Below, piece after piece: positions 4,901 to 46,950 of a stretch of DNA of 64,000 nt. A program made the position numbers and the translations under genes. Position 1 is the first letter of the stretch. Each line of letters starts with the position of its first letter. The notes beneath the pieces were generated by a model. It searched no databases. It saw only the letters and a program-made list of their open reading frames with translations, and was not told the DNA's origin. This stretch comes from Anolis carolinensis (lineage: Eukaryota): assembly GCF_035594765.1 (NCBI RefSeq), contig NC_085843.1:13717955-13781954 (forward strand), in the 5' to 3' direction.

Positions 4901-5278
4901 TGTATGTAGTGGGGTGATAGAGAAAAGTAATAGTTGACGTATGTGTGTATATATGTGTGTGTGTATGTCCTCCATCAAACAGCATTAAGGACCTTCAATT
5001 AGCTTCTATTACATCCCCCAAATAAGGATGCAGATTACAGACTGGATATTTGCACATGAAGATATGCAGCTGTGGTGAAGTACCTGAGGGCATACAAGCC
5101 TGCCATCAAACCATCATGAGCACAGGTCACAACCAACACTCAAGGACAGCTAAGTGGGAGCCAAGGAGCAAGCTCTTTAGAACCACCCTCCACTCAGTAC
5201 TAGAGGAAAGGAAAATCACATTGGTGGGGAATGGAGAGGAAGGCTTGAAAGCAAGAGCAGGACAAAAACTTCTCAATG

Positions 5279-5450
5279 TGTTGTCGAAGGCTTTCATGGC
5301 TGGAATCATTGAGTTGTGAGTTTTCCGGGCTGTATGGCCATGTTCTAGAAGCATCCTCTCCTGATGTTTCACTCACATGAATGGCAGGCATCCTCAGAAG
5401 TTGTGAGGTATATTGGAAACTAAGCAATGGGAGGTTTATATATCTGTGGA
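5279..5450 (-). mobile_element. Penelope-like element pLTR fragment
   Basis: ttgtcgaaggctttcatggctggaatc...gggctgtatggccatgttctagaagc motif, also at 33205 and 55043; contains a degenerate minimal hammerhead core on the minus strand. Confidence 0.75.
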
Positions 5451-6484
5451 AGAAAGAACTCATTTCTCATTTATTCTTATTCTGCTTCACAATGTTCCAT
5501 CTCTGCTTGAGACCCTTCACTTCTTCTAACATTCAGCACGTTCGGATTTGTTTGTGCTCACTTATCCTTCTAATCCTAAATGCAAGTCTAGAGGTTTTCA
5601 TTCAGAATACATTTAATCAAATACCTAAAGGTATCCAACAGAGTTGACAAGAGACTTGCAAAAAAGCAGAGTTAGGATTTGGCTTAATAAAGCTCCTATG
5701 CCAACAAAGCTTTTATATAGAAGTACAATAATGTGTAGATTTTATTTATTTATTTATTTATTTATTTAGATCACTTTTACCCCACCCTTCTCACCTGTAG
5801 GGACTCAGGGTGGCTTACAACAGTTGGCAATTTACATTGCCCAGAACACATTCAATAAAACAATAACAAAATCAATTAAAAACTCTATTAAACTCTATTA
5901 AAACATGAATTATAAAATTTTAAAATGCACATGTAGTTAGATTCGTCCTTTATAGGCCAATATTCATAAGACATATATCCTTCATATTTCGGTTTTACTA
6001 GCAAAGAACCATCAAACTTCCAGCTCAGTTGACCAGTTAAACCACTAAGATAGCACTTTCCATGGAAAGGATAGTAAATACAAGAAGCTGTCAGGTTGGG
6101 ATGCCAATGGAGCTGCAACTCGGAAAGTCAGAATTGGCTCTCTGGTTCAATGTAATTACTGGTGATCACTGGCCTGGGGCTTGACGCTTGCAGATGAAGA
6201 AAAGAGTTGGCAGGCAGTAGCATATCAGGATTTGCACAATGTTTTCAGATGGCTTTACTCCTCGCATTAAAGCTGAAAAGCTAGGCATCATGGTGTAGTG
6301 ATTGAGCATTGGGACCAGGGCCAGCCCTAGGCAGAGTGTGGCGGCTACCTCAGACAGCAAAAAGCCTTGTTATCAACATTCCCACCAGAATACTCTAAGA
6401 TAGCCTATCTGTTGCCATGTAGGTAGCCCCATGCTTCTTAAAATAATGGAATCATAGACACTCAGAAACACAGAGCTGGAAGAA

Positions 6485-8719: not shown

Positions 8720-8861
8720 NNNNNNNNNNNNNNNNNNNNNNNNNNNNNNNNNNNNNNNNNNNNNNNNNNNNNNNNNNNNNNNNNNNNNNNNNNNNNNNNN
8801 NNNNNNNNNNNNNNNNNNNNNNNNNNNNNNNNNNNNNNNNNNNNNNNNNNNNNNNNNNNNN
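8720..8861. other. Assembly gap (run of N)
   Basis: 142 consecutive N. Confidence 1.
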
Positions 8862-11061
8862 CTGTGTCCAGTTATGAGCACCACAATCAAAGATGAATAA
8901 TGACAAGCTGGAATATATTCAGAAAATGGCAACCAAAAAACTCCTAGGATGCCAAAACATGGAGCCTAGTTAAACATAGTTAAAGTGCATCAGTCTGCAT
9001 TACTTCTGCAGTGTAGATGCACCCATTGAGGATAAGAAAACTTAAGAATATTTTTTACATTCCTACTTTGGTGAAGCAGTTACAGTGTAAGAAAATGCAG
9101 CCTTCCAGCCAGAAAATACTCATAGCAGGCTAAGCCTAAGGTCTATCACTCACCCTGACTTTCCTTCTATGCATTTATGGTGAGCATAAAAATGATGTGG
9201 CATGAATCCTCTATGCTTTTACTGTTAGGAAAAGACTTATAGTCCAGGGTTGGAAAGAAAAATATTCACAATCTATTGCCCAATGTTCAGTAAATCTGAG
9301 TGCTTTAGCTATGCATCAACATGCATTTTATAGGCACCACATTCAAGGAAACGAGTTCTTGAAAATATGGCCATCTTATATTCATGTATATTCCTATCCC
9401 ACATACATATACTATTTACTACTGTCTTCCTTTTTTTTTCTTTACTTTTTTTCTCCCCTTTCTCTGTAATACTATTTTAATGACCCAATAAAAAATAAAA
9501 AGGAAAGAGAAACTTGTCACCTTGAGCTCCTTAGAGAAAAGACATGATAAGAAGGTAGAGCATACATAAATATACCCAAACAACAAGCTGGAGATTGAAA
9601 TTGTGTGCTTATAGATGTGAGAGATAAAATACTTGTGGGAAGATGGAAGACAAAAGGGAAAAAATGCAGGTGGAAAGACATATAAGGATGCAGGGAGCAG
9701 AAGAAATGATACAGATATTATGTGCTAAGTTGGCTTCAACGAGTAATGACCCCACAGCTGTCCAAGAAACCCTGTTATTAACAGCCTAGATCAGGTCTTG
9801 CAAAGTAAGGGTCATGGCTTCTTTGACTAAATCAATCCACCTGCCATGCCATCTTCCCCTTTTCCTCTTCCCTTCTATCTCACTAAACATCATGGTATTT
9901 TCCAGTGAGTAATGGCACCTCTCAATATGAATGATGTAGGAAAAACATGAATAATTTTCCCATACAGTACAGCCCCCAAATCCACAGGGATATTTTTCAG
10001 GATCCCATGTGACTATCTGAATCCATAGATAATAAGAAACTATATATGTTTACTACATGTGGGTCAAAAGCATACTGTAGAACCACACTGGATGATCTAG
10101 AGAGGCTCTGAAACATTTCCAGGAGGGAATATTTTTTGGACCAAAGATAAGTGAAACTATGGGTATCAAATCCATGAATAAGAGAGTTGTAGGGTATGTG
10201 TGCGGTGAGGTGGGAGGGTATGTAAATACACACAAACATACAGTGCTCAGTAACAATGCTTCCAATGCTGGCATTGAATGTTTGCCTTATACGCTGGAAA
10301 TTGCCCTGAGTCCCTATGGGAGAGAGGGCAGTCTACAAATAAAGTTTTATTATTGTTATTATTATTATTATTAATGCCACCTGCCCATTCCAACAATCCC
10401 ACTACTGACTGAGTCATTCTGGGAAATATCTTTTTTAAAAGTAAGACCAGACTAAACCATCAATTCAGAACTTCTAATGTTTACAGTGCAGCTGTCACTG
10501 TTTACTTGTACAATTTGTGCAGCTTGATGTAGTTTGTGGAGAAATGGTTCTTGCATGTGTGAAAATGTTCCCAAGACTTGTAGATAATATAGCCTACATT
10601 CTGCATGATGTTTGATAAAATTACACTGCATTACACAATGAGATTGTGGTATCTGCCAAAGGGCCCCCTTACTATCCCACTATGCAAGATAGATTAAACA
10701 GGTGTAATTGCTGCAATTCCAGTAAATAAAGTCATATGCTGAAGGCATGGAACAACATCCATTCCATGTGACTGAAATCCTGTGGGTCATTCTCAACTAG
10801 ACTAGACTTATTCAATCAACTGTTTATAGTGAGTTAACACATAGGTAAATCCAGTTAGCTTCTGAAACCTCTGAAACTCCAATTACTCAGCCATGAACTG
10901 AACATATCCATTGTACACTAGCAAAAAAGTATAATGGCACACACCGAGTGAAATTACACAAGATGAATAGCACCACAGGAATTAGTAGGGGTGTGTGGTG
11001 TTGTTGTTGCTTTTCATTCTCACATGGATGAAAGAGAGAAACACTATTTCCACATTTTATA

Positions 11062-12214
11062 TGTTATGGTTGAGCCTCATGGCTCTACTACTGGGAGACG
11101 TGGGCGTAAGACTCCTCGAGAGTCAGATACTCTCGAGGAGCGAGAAAGGAAGCGGCTGCGAGATATCTTTGCAGAACCATCTGACGAAGATTCTTTTGAG
11201 GGGTTTACTGAGAGAATGGAGGAAGAGGTGGTTAGCTCGGAAGAAGATGATATGGAATGGACTCGGGTAAGGGAGGATTTGGGTGCCACTGGCAATGATA
11301 CTATGGAAGACGATTGGGGACCTTCAGGATTAGACCCGTGGACAAGCTGGAGGGATGGGACAGGATCCACAGCTGGGGATGCTGTGGGGCGTAGTCAGAG
11401 GTGTTCCAGTTCTGATGAGGAAAGTGATGAGGAAACGCCCGGGCTAAGGAGAACAGCTGATAGTGATGAGGACTTGTAACTGGCATAAAATGGGGTTTGG
11501 GAGCAATAGCAAATTGCGTTGGGCAAGGTAATCTGGACGAACGCTTGGGATCTGTGTGGGAAGTTTTCCTGAAGACGGGTGTAATTCGTTTGCTGACTAC
11601 GTAAGTTATCCTGGACATTGGGCTCAGACGGCGGGAGGAATTGTGTGGGGTTTTGTTGTGCAACCTCTGCTTAATCTTAATAGCTTTGACCTTCCGTCGT
11701 CTTCTTGACGGACGCCATCTGCTACTCTGGATTTACGGACTGAACTGACTACGGCCTCGGATTCTCCTACCTGTGTCTGTCGTTGGAACTGGTGAACTAC
11801 AAACGTCTGCATCTGCCTTACGACCTTCGGAACGGACTGGGACTACGCTGACTGCTTCAACCCTCGTCTGCTGTGTTTGTATTGGGAATTTGCCTGCTGT
11901 GTGGAGGAGTAACTTCTAAAGTTACTCAAACATAGTTTTTGGCAGCAGAGAAGCATCTGCTGCCAATTAGTTGCATTCTTTTGAACCTTTTGTTCACCGG
12001 CTTCTGTTTGTTTAATCCCAGGCTGAAGCAAGCTGTTTTGATTTAGTCCGAATTAAACTCCGGTTTAATTCGGTTTATCTTTTGAACGTTTTTCTTGTCT
12101 CTTTTTACTTTTAAGGCCAGTGTTTGCCTAGCCCTTGTCTTTTACGGGCATTTTTGGTTCTGTAACTCCAATAAACTCTGTTATCTTTTATCTTGTGGCG
12201 TTCTGTCTTTGACA
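11062..12214 (+). mobile_element. Solo LTR (1153 bp), copy A, probably Ty3/Gypsy
   Basis: Ends TGTTA...TGACA with 5-bp TSD TTATA (11057-11061 / 12215-12219); TATA-like CATAAAA at 11484; AATAAA at 12170; homologous to 13101-14241. Confidence 0.9.
11066..11479 (+). CDS. LTR (U3)-encoded 137-aa acidic protein with basic NLS-like patches and an FxGF IBM/TIM-like motif, copy A
   Basis: Frame is open from the first LTR bases to TAA just before the TATA box. Same length as copy B, no indels, many synonymous differences. Confidence 0.7.
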   Translation: MVEPHGSTTGRRGRKTPRESDTLEERERKRLRDIFAEPSDEDSFEGFTERMEEEVVSSEEDDMEWTRVREDLGATGNDTMEDDWGPSGLDPWTSWRDGTGSTAGDAVGRSQRCSSSDEESDEETPGLRRTADSDEDL

Positions 12215-12477
12215 TTATATGCAGACAAAAATGTTATCTGCACAAACATCCCTGTGTAAATTTTGCATTGAATAAGTCCAAATTGTGAAAATTCCCATCA
12301 GTCAGAGATTTTTGACTCCAGGATTTCTCAACACTTGAGGAAAAAAACCATATACAGTATGACTCTTCTCTTTGTGGAGATATGTTCCGCATATGAATAC
12401 TCAAAACTGTGTATAACAGTGATCCCTAGATTTTAGCTGTGCTTGGGCCAGAAGCATACTGTAGTATAGCACTAGGA

Positions 12478-12612
12478 CAGTGGTTCTCAACCTGTGGGTC
12501 CCCAGATGTTTTGGCCTTCAACTCCCAGAAATCTTAACAGCTGGTAAACTGGCTGGGATTTTTGGGAGTTGTAGGCCAAAATACCTGGGGAACCACAGGT
12601 TGAGAACCACTG
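12478..12612. mobile_element. hAT-type MITE (cagtggttctcaacct family)
   Basis: TIRs cagtggttctcaacctgtgg / ccacaggttgagaaccactg. Confidence 0.9.
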
Positions 12613-13100
12613 GTCTAGAAGATCTAGAAAGGCCCACAAACACTTCTGGGGGAAGTAAGGAGGGATTGTTTTGGACTATAGCTAAGTGAATCCACTGATA
12701 TTAAATCTGTGAATAATGGGAATAGTACTGTATTCTTGCCATCTCTAGAAAAGCTTAAAATGATTATCTGCTTGACTTGATGACTCCTCTTGAGACAGTC
12801 AAGTCAAATGAAGGAGAACAACCAGACTGGAAATAAGAAACATTACTTGCTTGGACTACAACTTCAAAAATATCAACACCAGTACAGTAATCACACTTTC
12901 TGCCACTTCACTAATTTAAAATGTGAAGATCTCAGCTCAGACATGAGGAGGTTTATTGCTGCTATTGTGTCGTGTTATCTGTGCCTGGAAAAGTTATTTA
13001 TTTTTATTTATTTACAGCATTTATATTCCGCCCTTCTCACCCTGAAGGGGCCTCAGGGCGGGTCACATTACACATATAGGCAAACATTCAATGCCTTTTA

Positions 13101-14241
13101 TGTTATGATTGAGCCTCATGGCTCTGTTACTGACAGACGTGGGCGTAAGACTCCTCGAGAGTCAGATACTCTCGAGGAGCGAGAAAGAAAAAGACTGCGA
13201 GACATTTTTGCAGCACCATCTGACGAAGAGTCTTTTGAGGGGTTTACGGAGAGAATGGAGGAGGGGCTGGTTAGCTCGGAGGAGGATGAGATGGATTGGA
13301 CTCGGGTGAGGGAGGAATTGGGTGCCACTGGCCATGATGGGATAGAAGATGAATGGGGACCTTCAGGATTAGACCCATGGTTTAGCTGGAGGGATGGGAC
13401 GGGATCCACAGCTGGAGATGCTGTGGGGCGTAGTCAGAGGTGTTCCAGCTCTGATGAGGAAAGTGATGAGGAAACGCCCGGGTTAAGGAGGACAGCTGAC
13501 AGTGATGAGGATTTGTAACTGGCATAAAATGGGGCTTGGGAGCAATTGCAAATTGCGTTGGGCAAGGTAATCTGGACGAACGCTTGGGATCTGTGTGGGA
13601 CGCTTTCCTGAAGACTGGTGTGTTTTCGTGTGCTGATACGTAAGTTGTTTTGGAATTCAGGGTCAGACGGCGGGAGGAATTGTGTGGGCATTTGTTTGTG
13701 CAAACCTGTGCTTACTCTTATTAGCTTGACCTTCCGTCGTCTTCTTGACGGACGCCATCTCCTGCTTTGAAAACTCGGACTGAACTGACCACGGCTTGTC
13801 TTCCCCCTTCTTGGACTTGGAAACTACAAACGTCTGCTTCTGGCTTTGATCTACGGAAAGGAACTGGGTCTACTCTACTGCTACAATCCTTGGCTGATCT
13901 GTTCGTGTTGGAAATCCTGTCTGCTGTGTGTGTGGGAGCGACGCAAGTTACTCTAAGCACAGTGTTGGCAGCAGAGAGGAATCTGCTGCCAATTAGTTGC
14001 ATTCTTTTGTATCTTTTGTTCCTCGGCTTTTGTTTTGTTTATTCCCAGGCTGAAGCAAGCAGTTTGTTTTTACCCGGATTAAACTCCAGTTTAATCCGGT
14101 TTATCTTTTGAACGTTTTTCCTTGTCCCTTTTTGCTCCTAAAGGCTAATACTGCCTGGCCCTTGTATTTTACGGGCATTTTTGAGTTCTGTAATCCAATA
14201 AACTCTGTTATCTTGAATCTTGTGGCGTTCTGTCCTTGACA
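13101..14241 (+). mobile_element. Solo LTR (1141 bp), copy B, probably Ty3/Gypsy
   Basis: Ends TGTTA...TGACA with 5-bp TSD TTTTA (13096-13100 / 14242-14246); CATAAAA at 13523; AATAAA at 14197. Confidence 0.9.
13105..13518 (+). CDS. LTR (U3)-encoded 137-aa acidic protein, copy B
   Basis: MIEPHGS...RLRDIFAAPSDEESFEGF...DSDEDL*; 15 aa differences from copy A by manual alignment, mostly conservative (D/E, V/I, V/L, M/I). Confidence 0.7.
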   Translation: MIEPHGSVTDRRGRKTPRESDTLEERERKRLRDIFAAPSDEESFEGFTERMEEGLVSSEEDEMDWTRVREELGATGHDGIEDEWGPSGLDPWFSWRDGTGSTAGDAVGRSQRCSSSDEESDEETPGLRRTADSDEDL

Positions 14242-15254
14242 TTTTAACATAGAACAAAGACAAACAAACATAGGCTCCGAGCCGGGCTTCGAACTCATGA
14301 CCTCCTGGTCAGAGTGATTCATTGCAGTGATTGATTGCAGCTGCTCTTCCAGCCTGCGCCACAGCCCGAGTTACTTTCAAAGTTACTTTTATACACTACA
14401 GTTCTAAACCTTTCTCCAGCCAGCATGCCTAGTGGGCCACATTAGCTGGGGAATTCTGGTAGTTTTAGTTCCAAAAAGTAACTTCTCCAAGCTTTAGACC
14501 AGGTGAGTACCAACACCCTCCAAGGTATCTCAATCTCAACAGAAGTAATGTATTTTATCCATACCATTCTTCAAATCCAGACAGTTAAAAAATATACACC
14601 TAGAACAATTTTTCAAATACAGCGATTTTCATGACTTACTTCTTAGTCATAGAGGGAGAGCAGAAAAGCATCAAAGGAGTTTCCTTTACAAATAAATACA
14701 GGATGGAAAGAAGAATCATGCTTCTGGGCAGGGAATACATATTATATCATTGTCCCCAGGAAACTGCCCTATCTTTCCATGATTGGTACCTCGTATTTAA
14801 TTTCCCATGACTAACAATTTGTTTATCGTAATATCCAGGAGCAGATGTATAGGTTTCATAACCTAATGTATTAATTGCTCTTATGAAACAAGACTGATCA
14901 AATGTTCTGTGTCATTAGCAATGCTCTGACACAGAAATTAAAGAGGGAATTGCTCAAAGCAACTTTTAAACTCTTCGGGACACTTACAAAGCTGGTGTGG
15001 AATTAAGAAGCCTTTATGTTAGGTGGAGTGTGACGGGGAAGCGATATTCAAAATTAAACAGGAGAAACCTTACTGAAATGTGTATATGATAAGCAATATT
15101 GCATATGAAGCTTGAGAGGTAATATGATGGAGCTGGCTTGAGCACTGCATTAGAAAGATCTGAATGCAAGTCCCTCTGTAGCTTTGTATGTGACTTTGGA
15201 TCCATCAAAATCTCTCAGCACAAAATAGGATCCTTCAGATTACCATAAATAATT

Positions 15255-41378: not shown

Positions 41379-41742
41379 TGTCATGGGACCGATTCCAAGA
41401 GCTGAATCTGCAAGCTCTTGAATCGGAGCCATAACAATACGCACTCCTCGATAGCTCCTACGGACACCTGGCAGCCAAGCATGGGAAATTCTGGAGTGAG
41501 AATCAAAACAATTTTAATGAGTAGTTTGTGTTGTAGTGATAGTCATATGATACATGGGGTGGGGTTTGGGTGATGATATTTACGTGTGGTGTGACGTTGT
41601 AGCAAAGGTAATAAAAATGATTGTATGTAAACATTATGTCATTCTCGACTTTTCCAAGTCGTGTGTTCTTCAATAAAGATTGGTTTTGATAGCAGATACC
41701 TTTGGTCTGTGTTCATGCTGATCGTTTGAAGTAAGCGTGACA
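41379..41742 (+). repeat. 5' LTR (364 bp)
   Basis: Direct repeat of 46587-46950; TATA-like taataaaaa at 41609; AATAAA at 41672. Confidence 0.97.
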
Positions 41743-41744
41743 TT

Positions 41745-41755
41745 AAGTCGAGAAT
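41745..41755 (+). other. Self-priming primer-binding site
   Basis: AAGTCGAGAAT is the exact reverse complement of ATTCTCGACTT at 41641-41651 in the LTR; no TGG-initial tRNA-type PBS is present. Confidence 0.8.
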
Positions 41756-41794
41756 CCCATTCTCACCCTCCTGCGGAGCCGCAGTGAAGTGAAA

Positions 41795-44700
41795 ATGAGT
41801 GGAGGGGGCGATCGGAGCCCGAGGGGGGCAGAGGGCCCCTTACCAGATGTCCGGCCGCTGGGAGAGGAAACGCTACAGGCCATCGCTTCCTCCACCGGCT
41901 ACCCTAGGCCGAATGGAGTGACGCAGAGGATCCCCAGAGGAGGGAGAGGAGTCTCGGCGGCTGCGGAGACCAGTTAGGGATCCGGGGGGAGCATGCCGGA
42001 GACCGTGGCGCTACGGTTGTCCATCTTGGAGACCAACTTGTCACGGCTGTCGGAAACCGTGGGAAGATTGGTGCCGTTGTTGGAAGAGAATCTCCAGAGG
42101 GAGCCCACCCAGTACGGCACCGAAAGAGGACCGGGCAAGGATGAAGCCTGGAGCCAGAGGGGCCAGCGCGCGTCAACGCAGAGCCCAACGGCAGCAGGCG
42201 GTGATGGAGACGAGGAGTATTGGCAGGAGCTGGAGTTCCAAGAGAGGATGGCTCGGGAGGTGGATCACCAGCAAACCTTGGGAACTCTGAGGCCACCAAC
42301 CCCAACCAGAATCCCAACCCCCCGAATTGGTATCGGAGTCGAAATACCGCTAGGACCCGGGATCGGGTCTAGTGGGTAGGTGGATGGAAGGGCCGACGGC
42401 AGCGGCGGAATTCCGGGGACCACAGGGGGCGACCGCCGGGCTGGGGTGCGGCGTGGTCAAAAGGTCGGTTCAGGGGAACCTCATGCAACACCTCCCCAGG
42501 CCACCCGTTCAAAGGCAACGTACCGCAGAATGGATGCCTAGGAGAGAGGAGCTTAAACTGGAATACGGAGGGGAATCCTCCGAATTAAACTTTTTCCTCA
42601 TTGGCATCAGAGGGTACATGGAGGATAACGCGCACACATTCCCCTCCGAAGGAAGCATGGTTCGGGCCATCGGAAATACCCTCAAAAGGGGGGCGGCCAG
42701 CTGGTATGTACAATTACACGCCAGGCACGACCCGTGCTTGAGATCAGTGCCCCAATTCCTGGCTGCACTGGAGAACCGTTTTAGAGACCCGCTGGAGCAA
42801 TTAAGAGCTTGCGATCAATTAAAACTCATAAAACAAAGGGACAAGACAGTACCCGAGTATGCAGAAGAATTCCTCCATCTCGCGGAAAGGGTACCAGAGT
42901 GGTCCGAAGTGACCAAAGTAGAAATATTTAAAGAAGGACTGCGCCCTGAGATATTTAGCTGGGCGGCGCACAGGGATGATCCAGAGACGTTACAGGGTTG
43001 GATTCAACTAGCAGGGCGCGTCGAATCTACCCTGTCCCAAGTAAAGCGCTTCCGGAGCGGCGGGGCCCAGCAGCAACCGGCAGCGAGGGGTCGTGGAGAA
43101 ACAAGGAAGCAAGAGCGACCCGGAGGGCGGCCCGGGATCCCCTCCAAAGGAGACGACAACAGACCCAAGCCAGGATGCTTTGTGTGTGGGAAGACGGGCC
43201 ATCGGGCGGCGGAATGTTGGGCCCGGAAGGGAGAACCGCCCAAAGCCACAAAACCCACGCCAGCAGCCGGGAGACGAGCGGAGGAGGAGGTGCAAGCCCC
43301 AGAGCCTCCGGAGCAGCTGGTGAGTCAAGACAAACGCATGATGGTAGTGCCAAACTGCTTATCGGGACTAGAGAATCGAGCCACCTGTAGAGCATTCGTG
43401 GATTGCAGTTGCTCTAGGAACATTATAACTCCAGAATTAGCGGAGGCGCTAAAATGCCAGCAAACTGCACTTAAAGTTCCGATTGCGTTCTCGCAATTGG
43501 ACGGATCGGTGGCTGCTGGGGAAGTATCCACGAAAGAAATACAGGGGATCCCATGTAAAATAGGCAAATGGGAGGGAAGGATATCCTTTATAATAGCCCC
43601 TATCGCCACGTATAATGTCATACTAGGGATCCCGTGGCTGGAGCAGGCAAACCCCGAGGTAGATTGGAGGGGAAAGAGCATGTCGTTTAAAGAACAACAA
43701 ACGGAATGGGAGATAGGCAAGATAGCAGAGGAAGAGAGTGAGGGAGATGAGTCGGAGGAAATAAGCCAAGAACTATTGCCCCCGGAATACAGGGACTTTG
43801 TGGATGTGTTCAATCAGAAGGAAGCAAGCAAATTACCTCCCAAAAGGACTCTAGAAGTGGGAATCGAAATAACCCCAGGGGCAAACTTACCAAAACCTAA
43901 AGTTTACCCCATGTCTGTTCAGGAAAAAGAGGAATTGAGGAAATATATTGATAAAAATCTGGCGCGGGGGTTCATTAAGCCCTCCAGCTCCCCTTTGGGA
44001 GCCCCCGTGTTATTTAGGAGAAAGAAAGACAATTCTTTAAGACTGTGCATTGACTATCGAAATTTGAATGCAATTACGAAGGATAACAAATACCCTATGC
44101 CCTTAGTAAAGGACCTAATTACTGTGTTGAAGAAAGGGAACATATTTACCAAGCTTGATTTGATCGAAGCTTATCATAAGTTAAGAATCAAACCCGAGGA
44201 TACTTGGAAAACTGCATTTTCCTGCGCTTTCGGACTTTTTGAATATTTAGTTTTGCCTTTTGGATTAAAAAACGGCGGCTCCTGCTTCATGCAGCTCATA
44301 AACGAGATCTTACGCCCACTGTTATACCGGGGAGTATTTGTATTTTTAGATGATATCCTTATCGTGAGCGAGGACAGAAAACAGCACATTGAATTGGTCC
44401 GGGAAGTCTTGCAAAAGCTAAGGGAAGCAAAACTGTATGCAAAATTTTCCAAATGTGAATTCAACAAGACACAAATTGACTTTTTGGGGTATCGGATATC
44501 TTCGGATGGATTAGCTATGGACCCATCCAAAGTATCGGACGTAAGGGAATGGGGAGTCCCTCAAACAAGAAGACAATTGCAATCGTTCCTAGGATTCGCA
44601 AATTTCTATAGGTCGTTCATAAAGGGCTTTGCTCAACTGGCCGCACCCCTTACAGAACTTTTGAAAACGAAGGGGAAAGGGGAGACGGCAAAAGTAAAAG

Positions 44701-46511
44701 CCCCTGGCGCTAAGCTGAGTTGGACGCCAGAATGCCAAAAAGCTTTTGAGACTCTAAAAGGATGCTTTACGGAAGAACCCGTCCTAAAGCACCCAAACAT
44801 GCAGAGTCCTTTCATAATACATTGTGATGCTTCGGACTGTGCAAATGGGGCAGTATTATTGCAAAAGGATCAAAATGGGAATTTGAAACCATATGGATAT
44901 TTATCACGGAAGTTTAGCGAAACTGAAAAATGTTGGCCCATATGGGAAAAAGAAGCGTTAGCTATACTGAAGGCATTGGAATGCTGGTGGCATTTTCTTG
45001 AAGGAAGCAAAATCCCATTCGAAGTCTGGTCTGATCATAGAAATCTCCAGTACTTAAAGTCCCCACGAAAATTATCCCCCAAACAAATTAGATGGGCACA
45101 GTACTTCAGCAGGTTTAATTTCCAATTGAAGTTTTTCCAAGGGAAACAAAACATTCTGGCCGATGCCCTTTCACGCATGCCTCAACATGAGAATATAGCC
45201 GCAGCAAAGGAAGGAACTGTATTTTCCGAAAAACAAGGGGGGTTATCAGTCAGCACGAGGGCACAGACAGAAAGAGAGAACTCGGCAGCGGTCAAAATTA
45301 ACGAAGGAGGCATTTGGGAAAAGGAACTGGCACAATCATACGAAGGGGACCAATGGATTTTATCCAACGCAGAAAAAGGGGAACAAAAGGGGGGACTATG
45401 GTTTGTGAAAAGGAAATTGTACATTCCTGCAATATTGAGGGCTAAAATTTTGCATCGTTTCCATGATAACCAGAGCGCAGGACACATGGGAATTACAAAA
45501 ACGACGAAATCCGTAGCGAGGCATTGTTGGTGGCCAGGGATGAGAAAGGACATAAAAAATTATGTTACCCAATGTGACGATTGTGCCATGAATAAATCGC
45601 GGGGGGGGGGGGGAGACCAATGGGACTATTGCAGCCTGTGGCAGAACCTACCAGACCTTGGGAATGTGTGGCTATGGACTTTGTGGGGGAATTACCTGTC
45701 AGCAAGGGGCATCGTTATATATGGACTGTATTAGACTTGTTTTCCAAACAAGCTCACTTTATAGCGCTTGCAAAGCTACCATCAGCAGAGAAACTGGCCG
45801 ACTTATACATAAATCATATTTACAAGCTACACGGATGTCCTAGCAGGGTGGTCAGTGACAGGGGTGTCCAATTCACGGCAAAATTCTGGGGGAAATTCTT
45901 AGAAATATTAGGGGCAGAAAGGAGCATGAGTTCCGCTTTCCACCCTATGACAAACGGTGCAGTAGAACGTATCCAACAGACCCTTGGGCAGTTCCTTCGC
46001 ATATACTCAAATTAGAGACAAAACGATTGGTCTAGGTGGCTAGCATTTGCTGAACTAGCCTTTAATTCTACAATCCATTCCGCAACTAATAAAACTCCGT
46101 TTGAAATAATTTATGGGCACGAAATCCAGCCTTTACCCCAATTGCCAAAGTGGCCAGAGAATGGAGAAACAGGGGTGGGGAAATGGAAGACTCAGATGCA
46201 AGAATGTTGGAGCCACGTGACCTTAAAGGAAGCGCACAAAAAGTATAAAACCTTCGCAGATCGAAAAAGAATTGAGGGCGATAAGTTGGAAAAGGGGGGA
46301 CTTAGTATGGCTAAGTACAAAAAACATAAAACTAGGTCTGCCCTCAAAAAAGTTAAGCCCCAAATTCATCGGACCCTTCAGGATACAGGAAATCATAAAC
46401 GAAGTGACTTTCCAATTACAATTGCCAAAAAGTCTAGGGAAATTACACCCTGTGTTCCATCGCAGCTTATTAAAAAAGTATATGGGTACTTTGGATAAAA
46501 TGGATGCATAG
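41795..46511 (+). pseudogene. gag-pol polyprotein, disrupted
   Basis: Gag with CCHC (CFVCGKTGHRAAEC), protease (AFVDCSCSRN), RT (LDLIEAY, FLDD), RNase H (DASD, EKEALA), integrase HHCC, DDE core and GPF motif. Lesions: TAG 41975, frameshift ~42370, G13 run 45601-45613, TAG 46013, G6 run 46294-46299. Confidence 0.93.
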
Positions 46512-46554
46512 TGTTCATATTTGTTCTGTTTCAGAGTCATGGCGATCGAGGTAC

Positions 46555-46586
46555 AGAAGAAGAGGTCGGCGACAGGGGGGGCACCA
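46555..46586 (+). other. Polypurine tract region
   Basis: agaagaagagg...gacagggggggcacca immediately 5' of the 3' LTR. Confidence 0.8.
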
Positions 46587-46950
46587 TGTCATGGGACCGA
46601 TTCCAAGAGCTGAATCTGCAAGCTCTTGAATCGGAGCCATAACAATACGCACTCCTCGATAGCTCCTACGGACACCTGGCAGCCAAGCATGGGAAATTCT
46701 GGAGTGAGAATCAAAACAATTTTAATGAGTAGTTTGTGTTGTAGTGATAGTCATATGATACATGGGGTGGGGTTTGGGTGATGATATTTACGTGTGGTGT
46801 GACGTTGTAGCAAAAGTAATAAAAATGATTGTATGTAAACATTATGTCATTCTCGACTTTTCCAAGTCGTGTGTTCTTCAATAAAGATTGGTTTTGATAG
46901 CAGATACCTTTGGTCTGTGTTCATGCTGATCGTTTGAAGTAAGCGTGACA
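46587..46950 (+). repeat. 3' LTR (364 bp)
   Basis: One mismatch to the 5' LTR (agcaaaGgta vs agcaaaAgta). Confidence 0.97.

What the first reader, a model, noticed from the sequence alone, without database searches (positions are those of the whole stretch)
11162..13245. Retrotransposon LTR encodes a LEDGF/p75-IBD (TND)-interacting motif resembling JPO2/CDCA7L
Seen: both solo LTR ORFs contain helix-like RLRDIF, an acidic Ser linker and FxGF. Copy A reads DIFAEPSDEDSFEGF (11162-11206) and copy B reads DIFAAPSDEESFEGF (13201-13245). They are preceded by basic patches (RRGRKTPR, RERKRLR) and followed by further CK2-like S-D/E clusters. Known: host IBM/TIM motifs (acidic stretch + FxGF, CK2-enhanced) in JPO2/CDCA7L, MLL1, PogZ and IWS1 bind the integrase-binding domain of LEDGF/p75 and related TFIIS-N-terminal domains. 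The JPO2 motif as I recall it (DIFNAPSDDEEFVGF) has the same spacing. Lentiviral integrase uses the same LEDGF domain for targeting. Inference: this LTR family may encode a short-linear-motif mimic that tethers its integration complex (or transcription) to LEDGF/HRP2 or TND elongation factors on transcribed chromatin, which would fit insertion in a host intron. I know of no description of this in a vertebrate LTR retrotransposon.
Basis: partly seen in the sequence, partly recalled or inferred. Interest (0 to 1): 0.92.

Follow-up and report, generated by a model that had tools for sequence, protein, structure and literature searches.

The report
Lizard retrotransposon integrase tail, LEDGF-like motif
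The "LTR ORF" is really the last 138 codons of the integrase gene of a young Anolis Ty3/Gypsy retrotransposon that has lost its chromodomain. This conserved tail carries a close look-alike of the host peptide (JPO2/CDCA7L motif 1) that docks onto the chromatin tether LEDGF, so the element may use HIV's host tether by a different trick, although binding is untested.

Summary
Both peptides sit at the stated coordinates, in two independent solo LTRs (TG..CA ends, separate 5-bp target duplications).

The ORF is not an LTR gene of its own. In five full-length 6.3-kb Anolis carolinensis copies, pol (protease, RT, RNase H, integrase) reads through the polypurine tract into the 3' LTR. The motif therefore lies about 95 residues after the integrase SH3 domain.

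The tail is under purifying selection (dN/dS 0.16-0.27), strongest on the motif: 16 synonymous against 4 conservative amino-acid variants. Both Phe-x-Gly-Phe phenylalanines, the glycine and the upstream Phe are invariant in 23 distinct tails.

A PDB search with the 20-residue motif returns one hit, the LEDGF IBD-JPO2 M1 chimera 6EMO (11 of 16 identical, ungapped, E 0.24).

The nearest relatives all carry a chromodomain at this position. This family, nested among them, has none.

Best reading (about 0.5): a tethering peptide on the integrase tail that mimics cellular LEDGF/HRP2 partners. Binding and insertion preference are untested, and five annotated insertion sites show no gene-body bias. 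No paper describing this was found. Rated a new variant of a known kind.

The parts
11062..12214 (+). Solo LTR copy A (1153 bp), TG..CA ends, 5-bp target-site duplication TTATA at 11057-11061 and 12215-12219
   Evidence: 92% identical to the LTRs of the full-length element in L002
13101..14241 (+). Solo LTR copy B (1141 bp), TG..CA ends, 5-bp target-site duplication TTTTA at 13096-13100 and 14242-14246; a different subfamily from A
11063..11479 (+). Copy A of the LTR-encoded integrase tail: 138 codons plus stop, open from LTR base 2
   Evidence: The same frame is continuous with pol in L002, L004 and L005. Its translation is identical to the tails in L004
13102..13518 (+). Copy B of the LTR-encoded integrase tail: 138 codons plus stop
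11132..11206 (+). TIM/IBM-like motif, copy A (tail residues 24-48): predicted helix ending in L-R-D-I-F, an 8-residue acidic linker AEPSDEDS with a CK2-type Ser40, then FEGF
13171..13245 (+). TIM/IBM-like motif, copy B (linker AAPSDEES, then FEGF)
11093..11119 (+). Basic patch GRRGRKTPR upstream of the motif. A role as a nuclear localisation signal is possible but is only an inference
   Evidence: mostly conserved in 23 tails
11484..11490 (+). TATA-like CATAAAA, 5 nt after the pol stop codon (LTR position 423). The same element in copy B is at 13523-13529
11516..11526 (+). GCGTTGGGCAA (LTR 455-465), complementary to the sequence that follows the 5' LTR in full-length copies. It is the likely 5' end of the transcript, used for Tf1/sushi-type self-priming, and it marks the U3/R border
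   Evidence: 9-11 nt of complementarity in five elements; the mechanism is inferred
12183..12188 (+). AATAAA polyadenylation signal near the 3' end of LTR A

Best explanation
Shown:
- The window holds two solo LTRs of a young Anolis carolinensis Ty3/Gypsy family derived from chromoviruses.
- In intact copies, pol runs through the polypurine tract into the 3' LTR, so the first 417 nt of U3 encode the last 138 residues of the integrase.
- The tail is acidic and Ser-rich, with a composition typical of disordered regions.
- The tail is under purifying selection, and the constraint is strongest on residues 24-48.

Inferred:
- Residues 24-48 act as a TND-interacting / IBD-binding motif. It consists of a helix ending in Leu-x-Asp-Ile-Phe, an 8-residue acidic linker with a CK2-type serine, and Phe-x-Gly-Phe.
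- The motif would dock onto the integrase-binding domain of LEDGF/p75 (PSIP1) or HRP2 (HDGFL2), as the cellular partner JPO2 does in structure 6EMO.
- This would tether the intasome to H3K36-methylated, transcribed chromatin.
- It would replace the chromodomain that the family's relatives carry at the same place.
For: Architecture:
- Full-length copies are L002 5182-11509, L004, L005, L006 and the inner element of L001. All have 5-bp target duplications and LTR pairs 99.5-99.9% identical.
- pol has protease, RT, RNase H, integrase H2C2, rve and SH3_Tf2-1 domains. The frame stays open for 1214 codons into the 3' LTR in three copies.
- More than 20 database proteins show the same GDSVM junction followed by the tail.

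Selection:
- dN/dS between intact copies is 0.16-0.27 for the tail, 0.04-0.11 for the enzymes and 0.34-0.57 for the linker just upstream.
- In the motif there are 16 synonymous codon variants against 4 amino-acid variants (I/L, S/T, D/E, E/A). The rest of the tail has 41 against 48 (Fisher p 0.007).
- F36, F45, G47 and F48 are invariant in 23 distinct tails.

Motif identity:
- The only or best PDB hit is the LEDGF IBD-JPO2 M1 chimera 6EMO.
- The features match the published TIM definition: a helix, an acidic linker of 8-16 residues with CK2 sites, and an FxGF that is essential for LEDGF/HRP2 (PMC9987994).
- Single-sequence AF2 places a helix exactly on tail residues 24-36, ending at Ile-Phe.

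Context:
- All seven nearest non-family relatives have a Chromo domain after SH3, and this family has none.
- The family is nested among them in the tree.
- A short peptide in the integrase C-terminus that tethers to a host factor is an established mechanism, for example Ty1 (PMC10050235).
Against: - No binding or structural test of the complex was possible here.
- The PDB E-value (0.2) is borderline on its own, and the motif lies in an acidic, low-complexity tail.
- The family is young and has only been seen in A. carolinensis, so invariance has limited power.
- Of five insertions with annotation, one is intronic (an EBF-like gene), one is 2 kb from PRRT3 and three have no gene within 10 kb. 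That is no sign of gene-body enrichment at this tiny sample size.
- Insertions instead cluster near other copies of the family.
- AF2 also puts FEGF at the start of a second helix, whereas bound IBMs are extended there.
- Synonymous divergence in the tail is half that of pol, so part of the conservation is at the DNA level (U3).
Confidence: 0.5

Rival explanations
1. The tail is a generic acidic, CK2-phosphorylated disordered region. It might bind histones directly through acidic-aromatic contacts, regulate integrase, or serve nuclear import through the basic patch. On this reading the resemblance to JPO2 M1 is a coincidence of composition.
For: The tail is 29% Asp/Glu and 20% Ser/Thr with 15 CK2-type sites. 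The PDB match has E 0.2, not a significant value by itself. Other tail segments (residues 93-116) are equally conserved. There is no gene-body bias in five loci.
Against: The match covers 11 of 16 positions without a gap. It includes every contact-type residue: Ile-Phe, Pro-Ser-Asp, and Phe-x-Gly-Phe at the same spacing. The motif core occurs nowhere else in 212,000 translated codons. The excess of synonymous over amino-acid variants is concentrated on this segment.
Confidence: 0.25
2. The motif is a functional TIM, but its partner is another TND protein (IWS1, TFIIS, Elongin A, MED26, PPP1R10). Alternatively it acts on transcription of the element rather than on the choice of integration site.
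For: TIMs are read by several TNDs that share a helix plus acidic linker (PMC9987994). The tail is encoded in U3, and insertions show no obvious gene-body bias.
Against: According to the review, FxGF is the feature specific and essential to LEDGF/HRP2 partners. The motif sits on the integrase, the protein that selects targets, at the position where relatives carry a chromatin-reading domain.
Confidence: 0.12
3. The ORF is an independent LTR-encoded accessory protein (sag- or nef-like), translated from its own ATG at LTR bases 5-7, as the title 'LTR encodes' implies.
For: An ATG at codon 2 is present in all copies. Gene predictors have called the 137-residue ORF on its own (P0001).
Against: The frame is continuous with pol through the polypurine tract in every full-length copy, with no stop between SH3 and the tail. 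Relatives show the same read-through into the LTR. The 5' LTR copy lies in U3, upstream of the likely transcription start.
Confidence: 0.04
4. The ORF has no coding function. It persists because U3 regulatory DNA is conserved and the family is young.
For: Synonymous divergence in the tail (0.18) is half that of pol (0.35-0.38). This indicates DNA-level constraint or LTR homogenisation.
Against: dN/dS is 0.13-0.28 in every comparison between different insertions; the two LTRs of a single element differ too little to give a ratio. This includes a copy with dS 0.6-0.7, and there is no indel or stop in 414 nt, while the rest of the LTR is full of indels.
Confidence: 0.03

Closest known systems
JPO2/CDCA7L IBD-binding motif M1 (structure 6EMO) and other cellular IBM/TIM motifs (MLL1, IWS1, POGZ, ASK, MED1)
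   Same: A Leu/Val-x-Asp-Ile-Phe helix end, an 8-residue Pro-Ser-Asp acidic linker with a CK2-type serine, and Phe-x-Gly-Phe. 11 of 16 residues are identical to M1 with no gap. The sequence context is typical of disordered regions.
   Different: It is carried by a retrotransposon integrase, not by a host transcription factor. Binding is untested. Whether it was captured from the host gene or arose by convergence is unresolved; relatives have a shorter acidic segment ending in Leu/Met-Gly-Phe at about the same place.
Lentiviral integrase-LEDGF/p75 tethering
   Same: The proposed host partner and domain are the same (the IBD), and so is the proposed outcome: integration guided to H3K36-methylated, transcribed chromatin (PMC9987994).
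   Different: HIV-1 integrase offers a structurally prearranged binding site, whereas the cellular partners offer only an unstructured motif (PMC10854676). Here the interface would be a disordered linear motif on the C-terminal tail that copies the cellular partners.
Chromovirus integrase chromodomain
   Same: Same position (after the integrase SH3 domain) and same phylogenetic clade. All nearest relatives have one.
   Different: The chromodomain is absent. Only 33 residues lie between the SH3 motif HPVFHRSLL and the GDSVM junction at the LTR border, against about 85-90 residues in the relatives P0007 and P0009. A linear motif, not a folded reader domain, would do the tethering.
Integrase C-terminal tethering peptides: Ty1-AC40 (PMC10050235); Ty5-Sir4 and MLV-BET (from memory)
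   Same: A short segment in a disordered integrase C-terminus that binds a host chromatin or transcription factor. Phosphorylation dependence is possible here, as for Ty5 (from memory).
   Different: The partner is different, the motif copies a known host motif, and it is encoded inside the LTR.
Host-derived targeting modules in retrotransposons, e.g. the MBD captured by arthropod Copia elements (PMC6673714)
   Same: A retrotransposon carrying a host-like chromatin-addressing module.
   Different: That case is a folded domain with proven host origin and binding. Here it is a 25-residue linear motif of unproven origin and function.

Membership tests
LEDGF/HRP2 IBD-binding motif (IBM), a TND-interacting motif (TIM) | Phe-x-Gly-Phe, essential for LEDGF/HRP2 partners | tested here: met
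   FEGF is present in both window copies. F45, G47 and F48 are invariant in 23 distinct tails, with synonymous codon variation at F45 and G47. The definition comes from PMC9987994.
LEDGF/HRP2 IBD-binding motif (IBM), a TND-interacting motif (TIM) | Acidic linker of 8-16 residues, rich in Asp/Glu with CK2-type Ser/Thr | tested here: met
   The 8-residue linker is AEPSDEDS or AAPSDEES. Ser40 lies in S-D-E-D/E, and its only variant is Thr.
LEDGF/HRP2 IBD-binding motif (IBM), a TND-interacting motif (TIM) | Short amphipathic helix with Ile/Leu/Val/Phe anchors upstream of the linker | tested here: met
   AF2 (single sequence) predicts a helix on tail residues 24-36, ending at Ile-Phe, with the highest pLDDT of the model (64-74). 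L32, I/L35 and F36 are conserved. This is a prediction only.
LEDGF/HRP2 IBD-binding motif (IBM), a TND-interacting motif (TIM) | Lies in an intrinsically disordered region | tested here: inconclusive
   The composition is typical of disorder: 29% D/E, 20% S/T, 14% G/P. No Pfam domain was found. The low pLDDT is uninformative, because the adjacent SH3 domain also scored low without an alignment.
LEDGF/HRP2 IBD-binding motif (IBM), a TND-interacting motif (TIM) | Physical, Phe-dependent binding to the IBD/TND | not testable with these tools
   No complex modelling or assay was available. Chimeric inputs are not accepted by the structure tool.
Ty3/Gypsy (Metaviridae) LTR retrotransposon | LTRs with TG..CA ends and a 5-bp target duplication; gag; pol in the order protease, RT, RNase H, integrase | tested here: met
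Chromovirus (Ty3/Gypsy with a chromodomain on the integrase) | RT-integrase phylogeny within the chromodomain-bearing clade | tested here: met
   In the quick ML tree the family is sister to a Podarcis chromovirus (SH-aLRT 89) and then to an Anolis chromovirus (91).
Chromovirus (Ty3/Gypsy with a chromodomain on the integrase) | Chromodomain C-terminal to the integrase SH3 domain | tested here: not met
   There is no PF00385 hit in the L002 pol or in P0004 at E 0.01, nor at E 10 on the tail alone. Seven relatives score 1e-7 to 1e-17.
LTR-encoded accessory gene (sag/nef type) | An ORF separate from gag/pol/env with its own expression | tested here: not met
   The ORF is the in-frame continuation of pol in all full-length copies.
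Tf1/sushi-type self-priming elements | The primer-binding site is complementary to the 5' end of the element's own transcript rather than to a tRNA | tested here: inconclusive
   There is 9-11 nt of complementarity between the sequence after the 5' LTR and LTR 455-465, 32 nt after a TATA-like box, in five elements. The transcription start was not mapped.

The most novel reading that the evidence does not exclude
In squamate chromoviruses, the LTR-encoded integrase tail may serve as an evolvable address label made of host-like linear motifs. The ancestral state would be a chromodomain plus a tail ending in an HMGN/Dsup-type nucleosome-binding motif (RRSARIAAK). One Anolis lineage then discarded both and evolved or captured a mimic of the JPO2 LEDGF-binding motif. 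That change would redirect integration from heterochromatin or bulk nucleosomes to LEDGF-marked transcribed chromatin. It would be a retrotransposon converging on the lentiviral host tether through a different interface.
Probability: 0.35. Interest if true: 0.9.

Novelty: new variant of a known kind. Interest (0 to 1): 0.8.

Why it matters
Integration-site choice decides how harmful a retroelement is and how useful a vector can be. The known tethers are a handful of cases: LEDGF for lentiviruses, BET proteins for gammaretroviruses, Pol III for Ty1/Ty3, Sir4 for Ty5, and chromodomains for chromoviruses.

If this motif works as proposed, it would be the first LTR retrotransposon I know of to use LEDGF/HRP2, and it would do so by copying a cellular partner's linear motif. 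It would show that the LEDGF hub has been targeted twice by different routes. It would also offer a natural module swap (chromodomain to linear motif) between sister families in one genome, which can be checked simply by comparing their insertion maps. Finally, it would extend the TND-TIM interaction network to mobile elements.

The family looks recently active: LTR pairs are 99.5-99.9% identical and the ORFs are intact. The key peptide test is simple.

Tried and rejected
- Pfam on the tails gave nothing, apart from one non-significant CUSTOS hit.
- A PDB search with the whole 137-residue tail gave only chance hits. The JPO2 chimera appears only with the motif alone.
- HMMER of the tail against 1.84 billion representative proteins found only two Anolis-type hits. 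No host donor gene is recognisable, and there is no evidence for the tail outside A. carolinensis. Three word-index searches agree.
- The idea that A and B are the two LTRs of one element was rejected. They have different target duplications and belong to different subfamilies, and the 886 bp between them contain no retrotransposon genes.
- The bacterial promoter/terminator scan was irrelevant.
- The primary IBM papers (Tesina 2015, Sharma 2018, Cermakova 2021) are not held in the library. The motif definition was taken from the review PMC9987994.
- Capture from CDCA7L against convergence could not be tested, because no tool gave the Anolis CDCA7L sequence and I did not type a host or human sequence from memory. 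From memory only, human JPO2 also has Ser-Ser-Glu-Glu nine residues after Gly-Phe, as the tail does. This is an unverified lead.
- Pfam and PDB gave no support for the HMGN-like motif of the relatives. Its identity rests on the literature string RRSARLSA.
- P0009 is not on record for a locus look-up; P0073 was used instead.
- The gene context of the window itself could not be established. All long ORFs there derive from transposable elements.
The consensus lines that the alignment tools print automatically were not used.
Full report
OBSERVATION. Window 11162-11206 reads DIFAEPSDEDSFEGF and 13201-13245 reads DIFAAPSDEESFEGF, each inside an ORF of 138 codons. The surrounding repeats are 1153 bp (11062-12214) and 1141 bp (13101-14241) long and 85-88% identical. 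Both start with TG and end with CA. No other copy lies in the window.

WHAT THE ORF IS. The ORF is open from the second base of the LTR. Protein searches found Anolis carolinensis models in which the same sequence follows an integrase SH3 domain (P0003). The locus of that model (L002) holds a full-length 6328-bp element:
- 5' LTR at 5182-6322.
- gag of 266 residues (Retrotrans_gag, Ty3_capsid, zinc knuckle).
- pol in the -1 frame, with protease, RT, RNase H, integrase H2C2, rve and SH3_Tf2-1.
- 3' LTR at 10369-11509.

The pol frame runs through the polypurine tract (GAGAGGGGATAG, which encodes ..RGDS) into the 3' LTR and stops at LTR position 416-418.

Four more full-length copies were recovered: L004, L005, L006 and a copy nested in L001. 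All have 5-bp target duplications and LTR pairs 99.5-99.9% identical. Three have the whole 1214-codon pol frame open. More than 20 database proteins show the same GDSVM junction followed by the tail. So the 'LTR ORF' is the C-terminal tail of the integrase, and the solo LTRs in the window carry orphaned copies of it. The motif starts about 95 residues after the SH3 domain.

A TATA-like CATAAAA follows the stop codon by 5 nt. Thirty-two nt further on lies an 11-mer complementary to the sequence just after the 5' LTR, in all five elements. This suggests Tf1/sushi-type self-priming and means that U3 is almost entirely coding. The mechanism is inferred.

IS IT CODING AND CONSTRAINED? Nine LTR copies keep the 414-nt frame without an indel or a stop, whereas the rest of the LTR is full of indels. 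Pairwise dN/dS is 0.13-0.28, including comparisons with a copy at dS 0.6-0.7. Between intact elements, dN/dS is:
- 0.04-0.11 for the enzymes.
- 0.34-0.57 for the 30-residue linker between SH3 and the LTR.
- 0.16-0.27 for the LTR-encoded tail.

Synonymous divergence in the tail is half that of pol, so there is also DNA-level constraint (U3) or LTR homogenisation.

Within the tail, the motif segment (codons 24-48) shows 16 extra synonymous codon types but only 4 extra amino-acid types. All four are conservative or tolerated: I/L, S/T, D/E and E/A. The rest of the tail shows 41 against 48 (Fisher p 0.007). In 23 distinct full-length tails from at least three subfamilies, D34, F36, D41, E42, S44, F45, G47 and F48 never change. 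The one copy with FEGS is a 5' LTR whose 3' partner still reads FEGF, so that change arose after insertion.

IS IT A LEDGF-TYPE MOTIF? The review of the TFIIS N-terminal domain defines a TIM as three parts: an obligate short helix with Phe/Val/Leu/Ile anchors, an acidic linker of 8-16 residues often phosphorylated by CK2, and an optional FxGF. The FxGF is present in, and essential for, all known partners of LEDGF and HRP2 (PMC9987994). The tail has all three parts.
- Single-sequence AF2 predicts a helix on residues 24-36 that ends at Ile-Phe.
- The linker is 8 residues long, with Ser40 in a CK2 context.
- FEGF follows the linker.

A phmmer search of the 20-residue motif against all PDB sequences returns exactly one hit, chain 6EMO_A. 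This is the LEDGF/p75 IBD fused to JPO2 motif 1, aligned without a gap to DIFNAPSDDEEFVGFR at 11/16 identity, E 0.24. A profile of five family variants gives the same top hit at E 0.2. The core [ED]x[ED]xFxGF occurs nowhere else in six-frame translations of 106 kb.

EVOLUTIONARY CONTEXT. The closest non-family Pol proteins are P0007 from Podarcis muralis, P0009 and P0010 from Anolis, and several metagenomic sequences. All have a Chromo domain 20-25 residues after SH3; this family has none. A quick ML tree nests the family inside the chromodomain-bearing group, sister to the Podarcis element (SH-aLRT 89). The chromodomain was therefore lost. Only 33 residues separate the SH3 motif HPVFHRSLL from the GDSVM junction at the LTR border, against about 85-90 in the relatives P0007 and P0009.

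The relatives also read into their LTR through the same polypurine tract (L007). Their tails are otherwise very variable, but they end in a conserved RRS(A/L)R(I/L)AA(K/R). This matches the HMGN/Dsup nucleosome-binding motif RRSARLSA (PMC12487698). In our family the corresponding place reads LRRTADSDEDL. At roughly the motif's position the relatives have a shorter acidic stretch ending in Leu/Met-Gly-Phe. The JPO2-like motif may therefore have evolved within an older tail rather than been captured. This is unresolved.

MECHANISM. The position on the integrase, the loss of the ancestral chromatin reader, the protein-level constraint and the full feature match together make a tethering peptide for the LEDGF/HRP2 IBD the best-supported reading. 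I put it at about 0.5. The steps from 'motif present and constrained' to 'binds the IBD' and then to 'directs integration' are inferences.

Some evidence points the other way. Among five insertions with annotation, one is in an intron of an EBF-like gene, one is 2 kb from PRRT3, and three have no gene within 10 kb. The gene context of the window itself could not be determined; its long ORFs all derive from transposable elements. What stands out instead is clustering. A and B lie 0.9 kb apart, one full-length copy sits inside an older family LTR (L001), and another lies 4 kb from a related LTR (L005).

The rival readings are: a generic acidic phospho-tail or direct histone binder; a TIM for another TND protein; a separate accessory protein; and no coding function. 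They are weighed in the structured fields.

NOVELTY. Full-text searches that combined retrotransposon, integrase, LEDGF and TND-interacting motif, or chromovirus and Anolis, found no description of such a motif in a retroelement integrase. Tethering by an integrase C-terminal peptide is a known principle (Ty1, PMC10050235), and so is acquisition of host chromatin modules by retrotransposons (PMC6673714). I therefore rate this a new variant of a known kind, contingent on binding.

LIMITS AND CONDUCT. All tail-bearing sequences found are from A. carolinensis. No contig taken for human was met. The N run at 8720-8861 was left alone. One bench step that would mobilise or alter the element is referred.

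Noticed in passing
P0007 residues 1219-1227; P0009 residues 1200-1208; L007:7757-7801: Chromodomain-bearing relatives in Anolis and Podarcis end their LTR-encoded integrase tails with a conserved RRS(A/L)R(I/L)AA(K/R). This matches the HMGN/Dsup nucleosome-binding motif RRSARLSA (PMC12487698). It is kept across subfamilies whose tails are otherwise very different, so it may be a second host-like chromatin tether. Pfam and PDB searches gave no support.
   Followed up: partly
window 41379-46886: A second Ty3/Gypsy element of a different family (P0055/P0058 type, with no chromodomain and a short tail). It has 300-nt LTR segments that are 100% identical, a 1120-codon gag-pol ORF at 42372-45734, and a broken integrase end.
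   Followed up: partly
window 11062-14241; L001 10525-17851; L005 2-992 and 5171-11520: Copies of the family cluster. Two independent solo LTRs lie 0.9 kb apart in the same orientation, one full-length copy is inserted inside an older family LTR, and another lies 4 kb from a related LTR (73% identical). Three of six loci is far more than a dispersed family should give, which hints at a regional or self-directed insertion preference.
   Followed up: no
P0054, P0017, P0022, P0073, P0074; window 11267-11272: Host gene models contain pieces of these elements. A glucosidase II alpha model carries 53 in-frame residues of the tail, and a dystrobrevin-like model carries an integrase fragment. Models named OGFRL1 isoform X4, PCBD2 isoform X1 and KCNQ5 isoform X3 belong to retrotransposon Pol clusters at 90% identity; P0022 (OGFRL1) was checked and aligns with Pol over its whole length. 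A GTAAGG at tail codon 68-70 is probably the splice donor that predictors use.
   Followed up: partly
L002 6323-6336 and LTR positions 455-465 (window 11516-11526): The sequence after the 5' LTR is complementary to an 11-mer 32 nt downstream of a TATA-like box in the LTR, in five elements. This suggests Tf1/sushi-type self-priming and a U3 that is almost wholly coding.
   Followed up: partly
L007 2224-6326 and 7534-11624: The chromovirus relative sits in a tandem LTR-internal-LTR-internal arrangement (4.1 kb repeated at 98.9% identity), inside an intron of the PCBD2 gene.
   Followed up: no
L002, L004, L005 pol codons 1076-1214: Synonymous divergence in the LTR-encoded tail is about half that of the rest of pol between the same elements. 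This fits a double constraint (protein plus U3 promoter) or homogenisation of the LTRs.
   Followed up: partly
window 8720-8861: A run of 142 N. It was left as it is.
   Followed up: no
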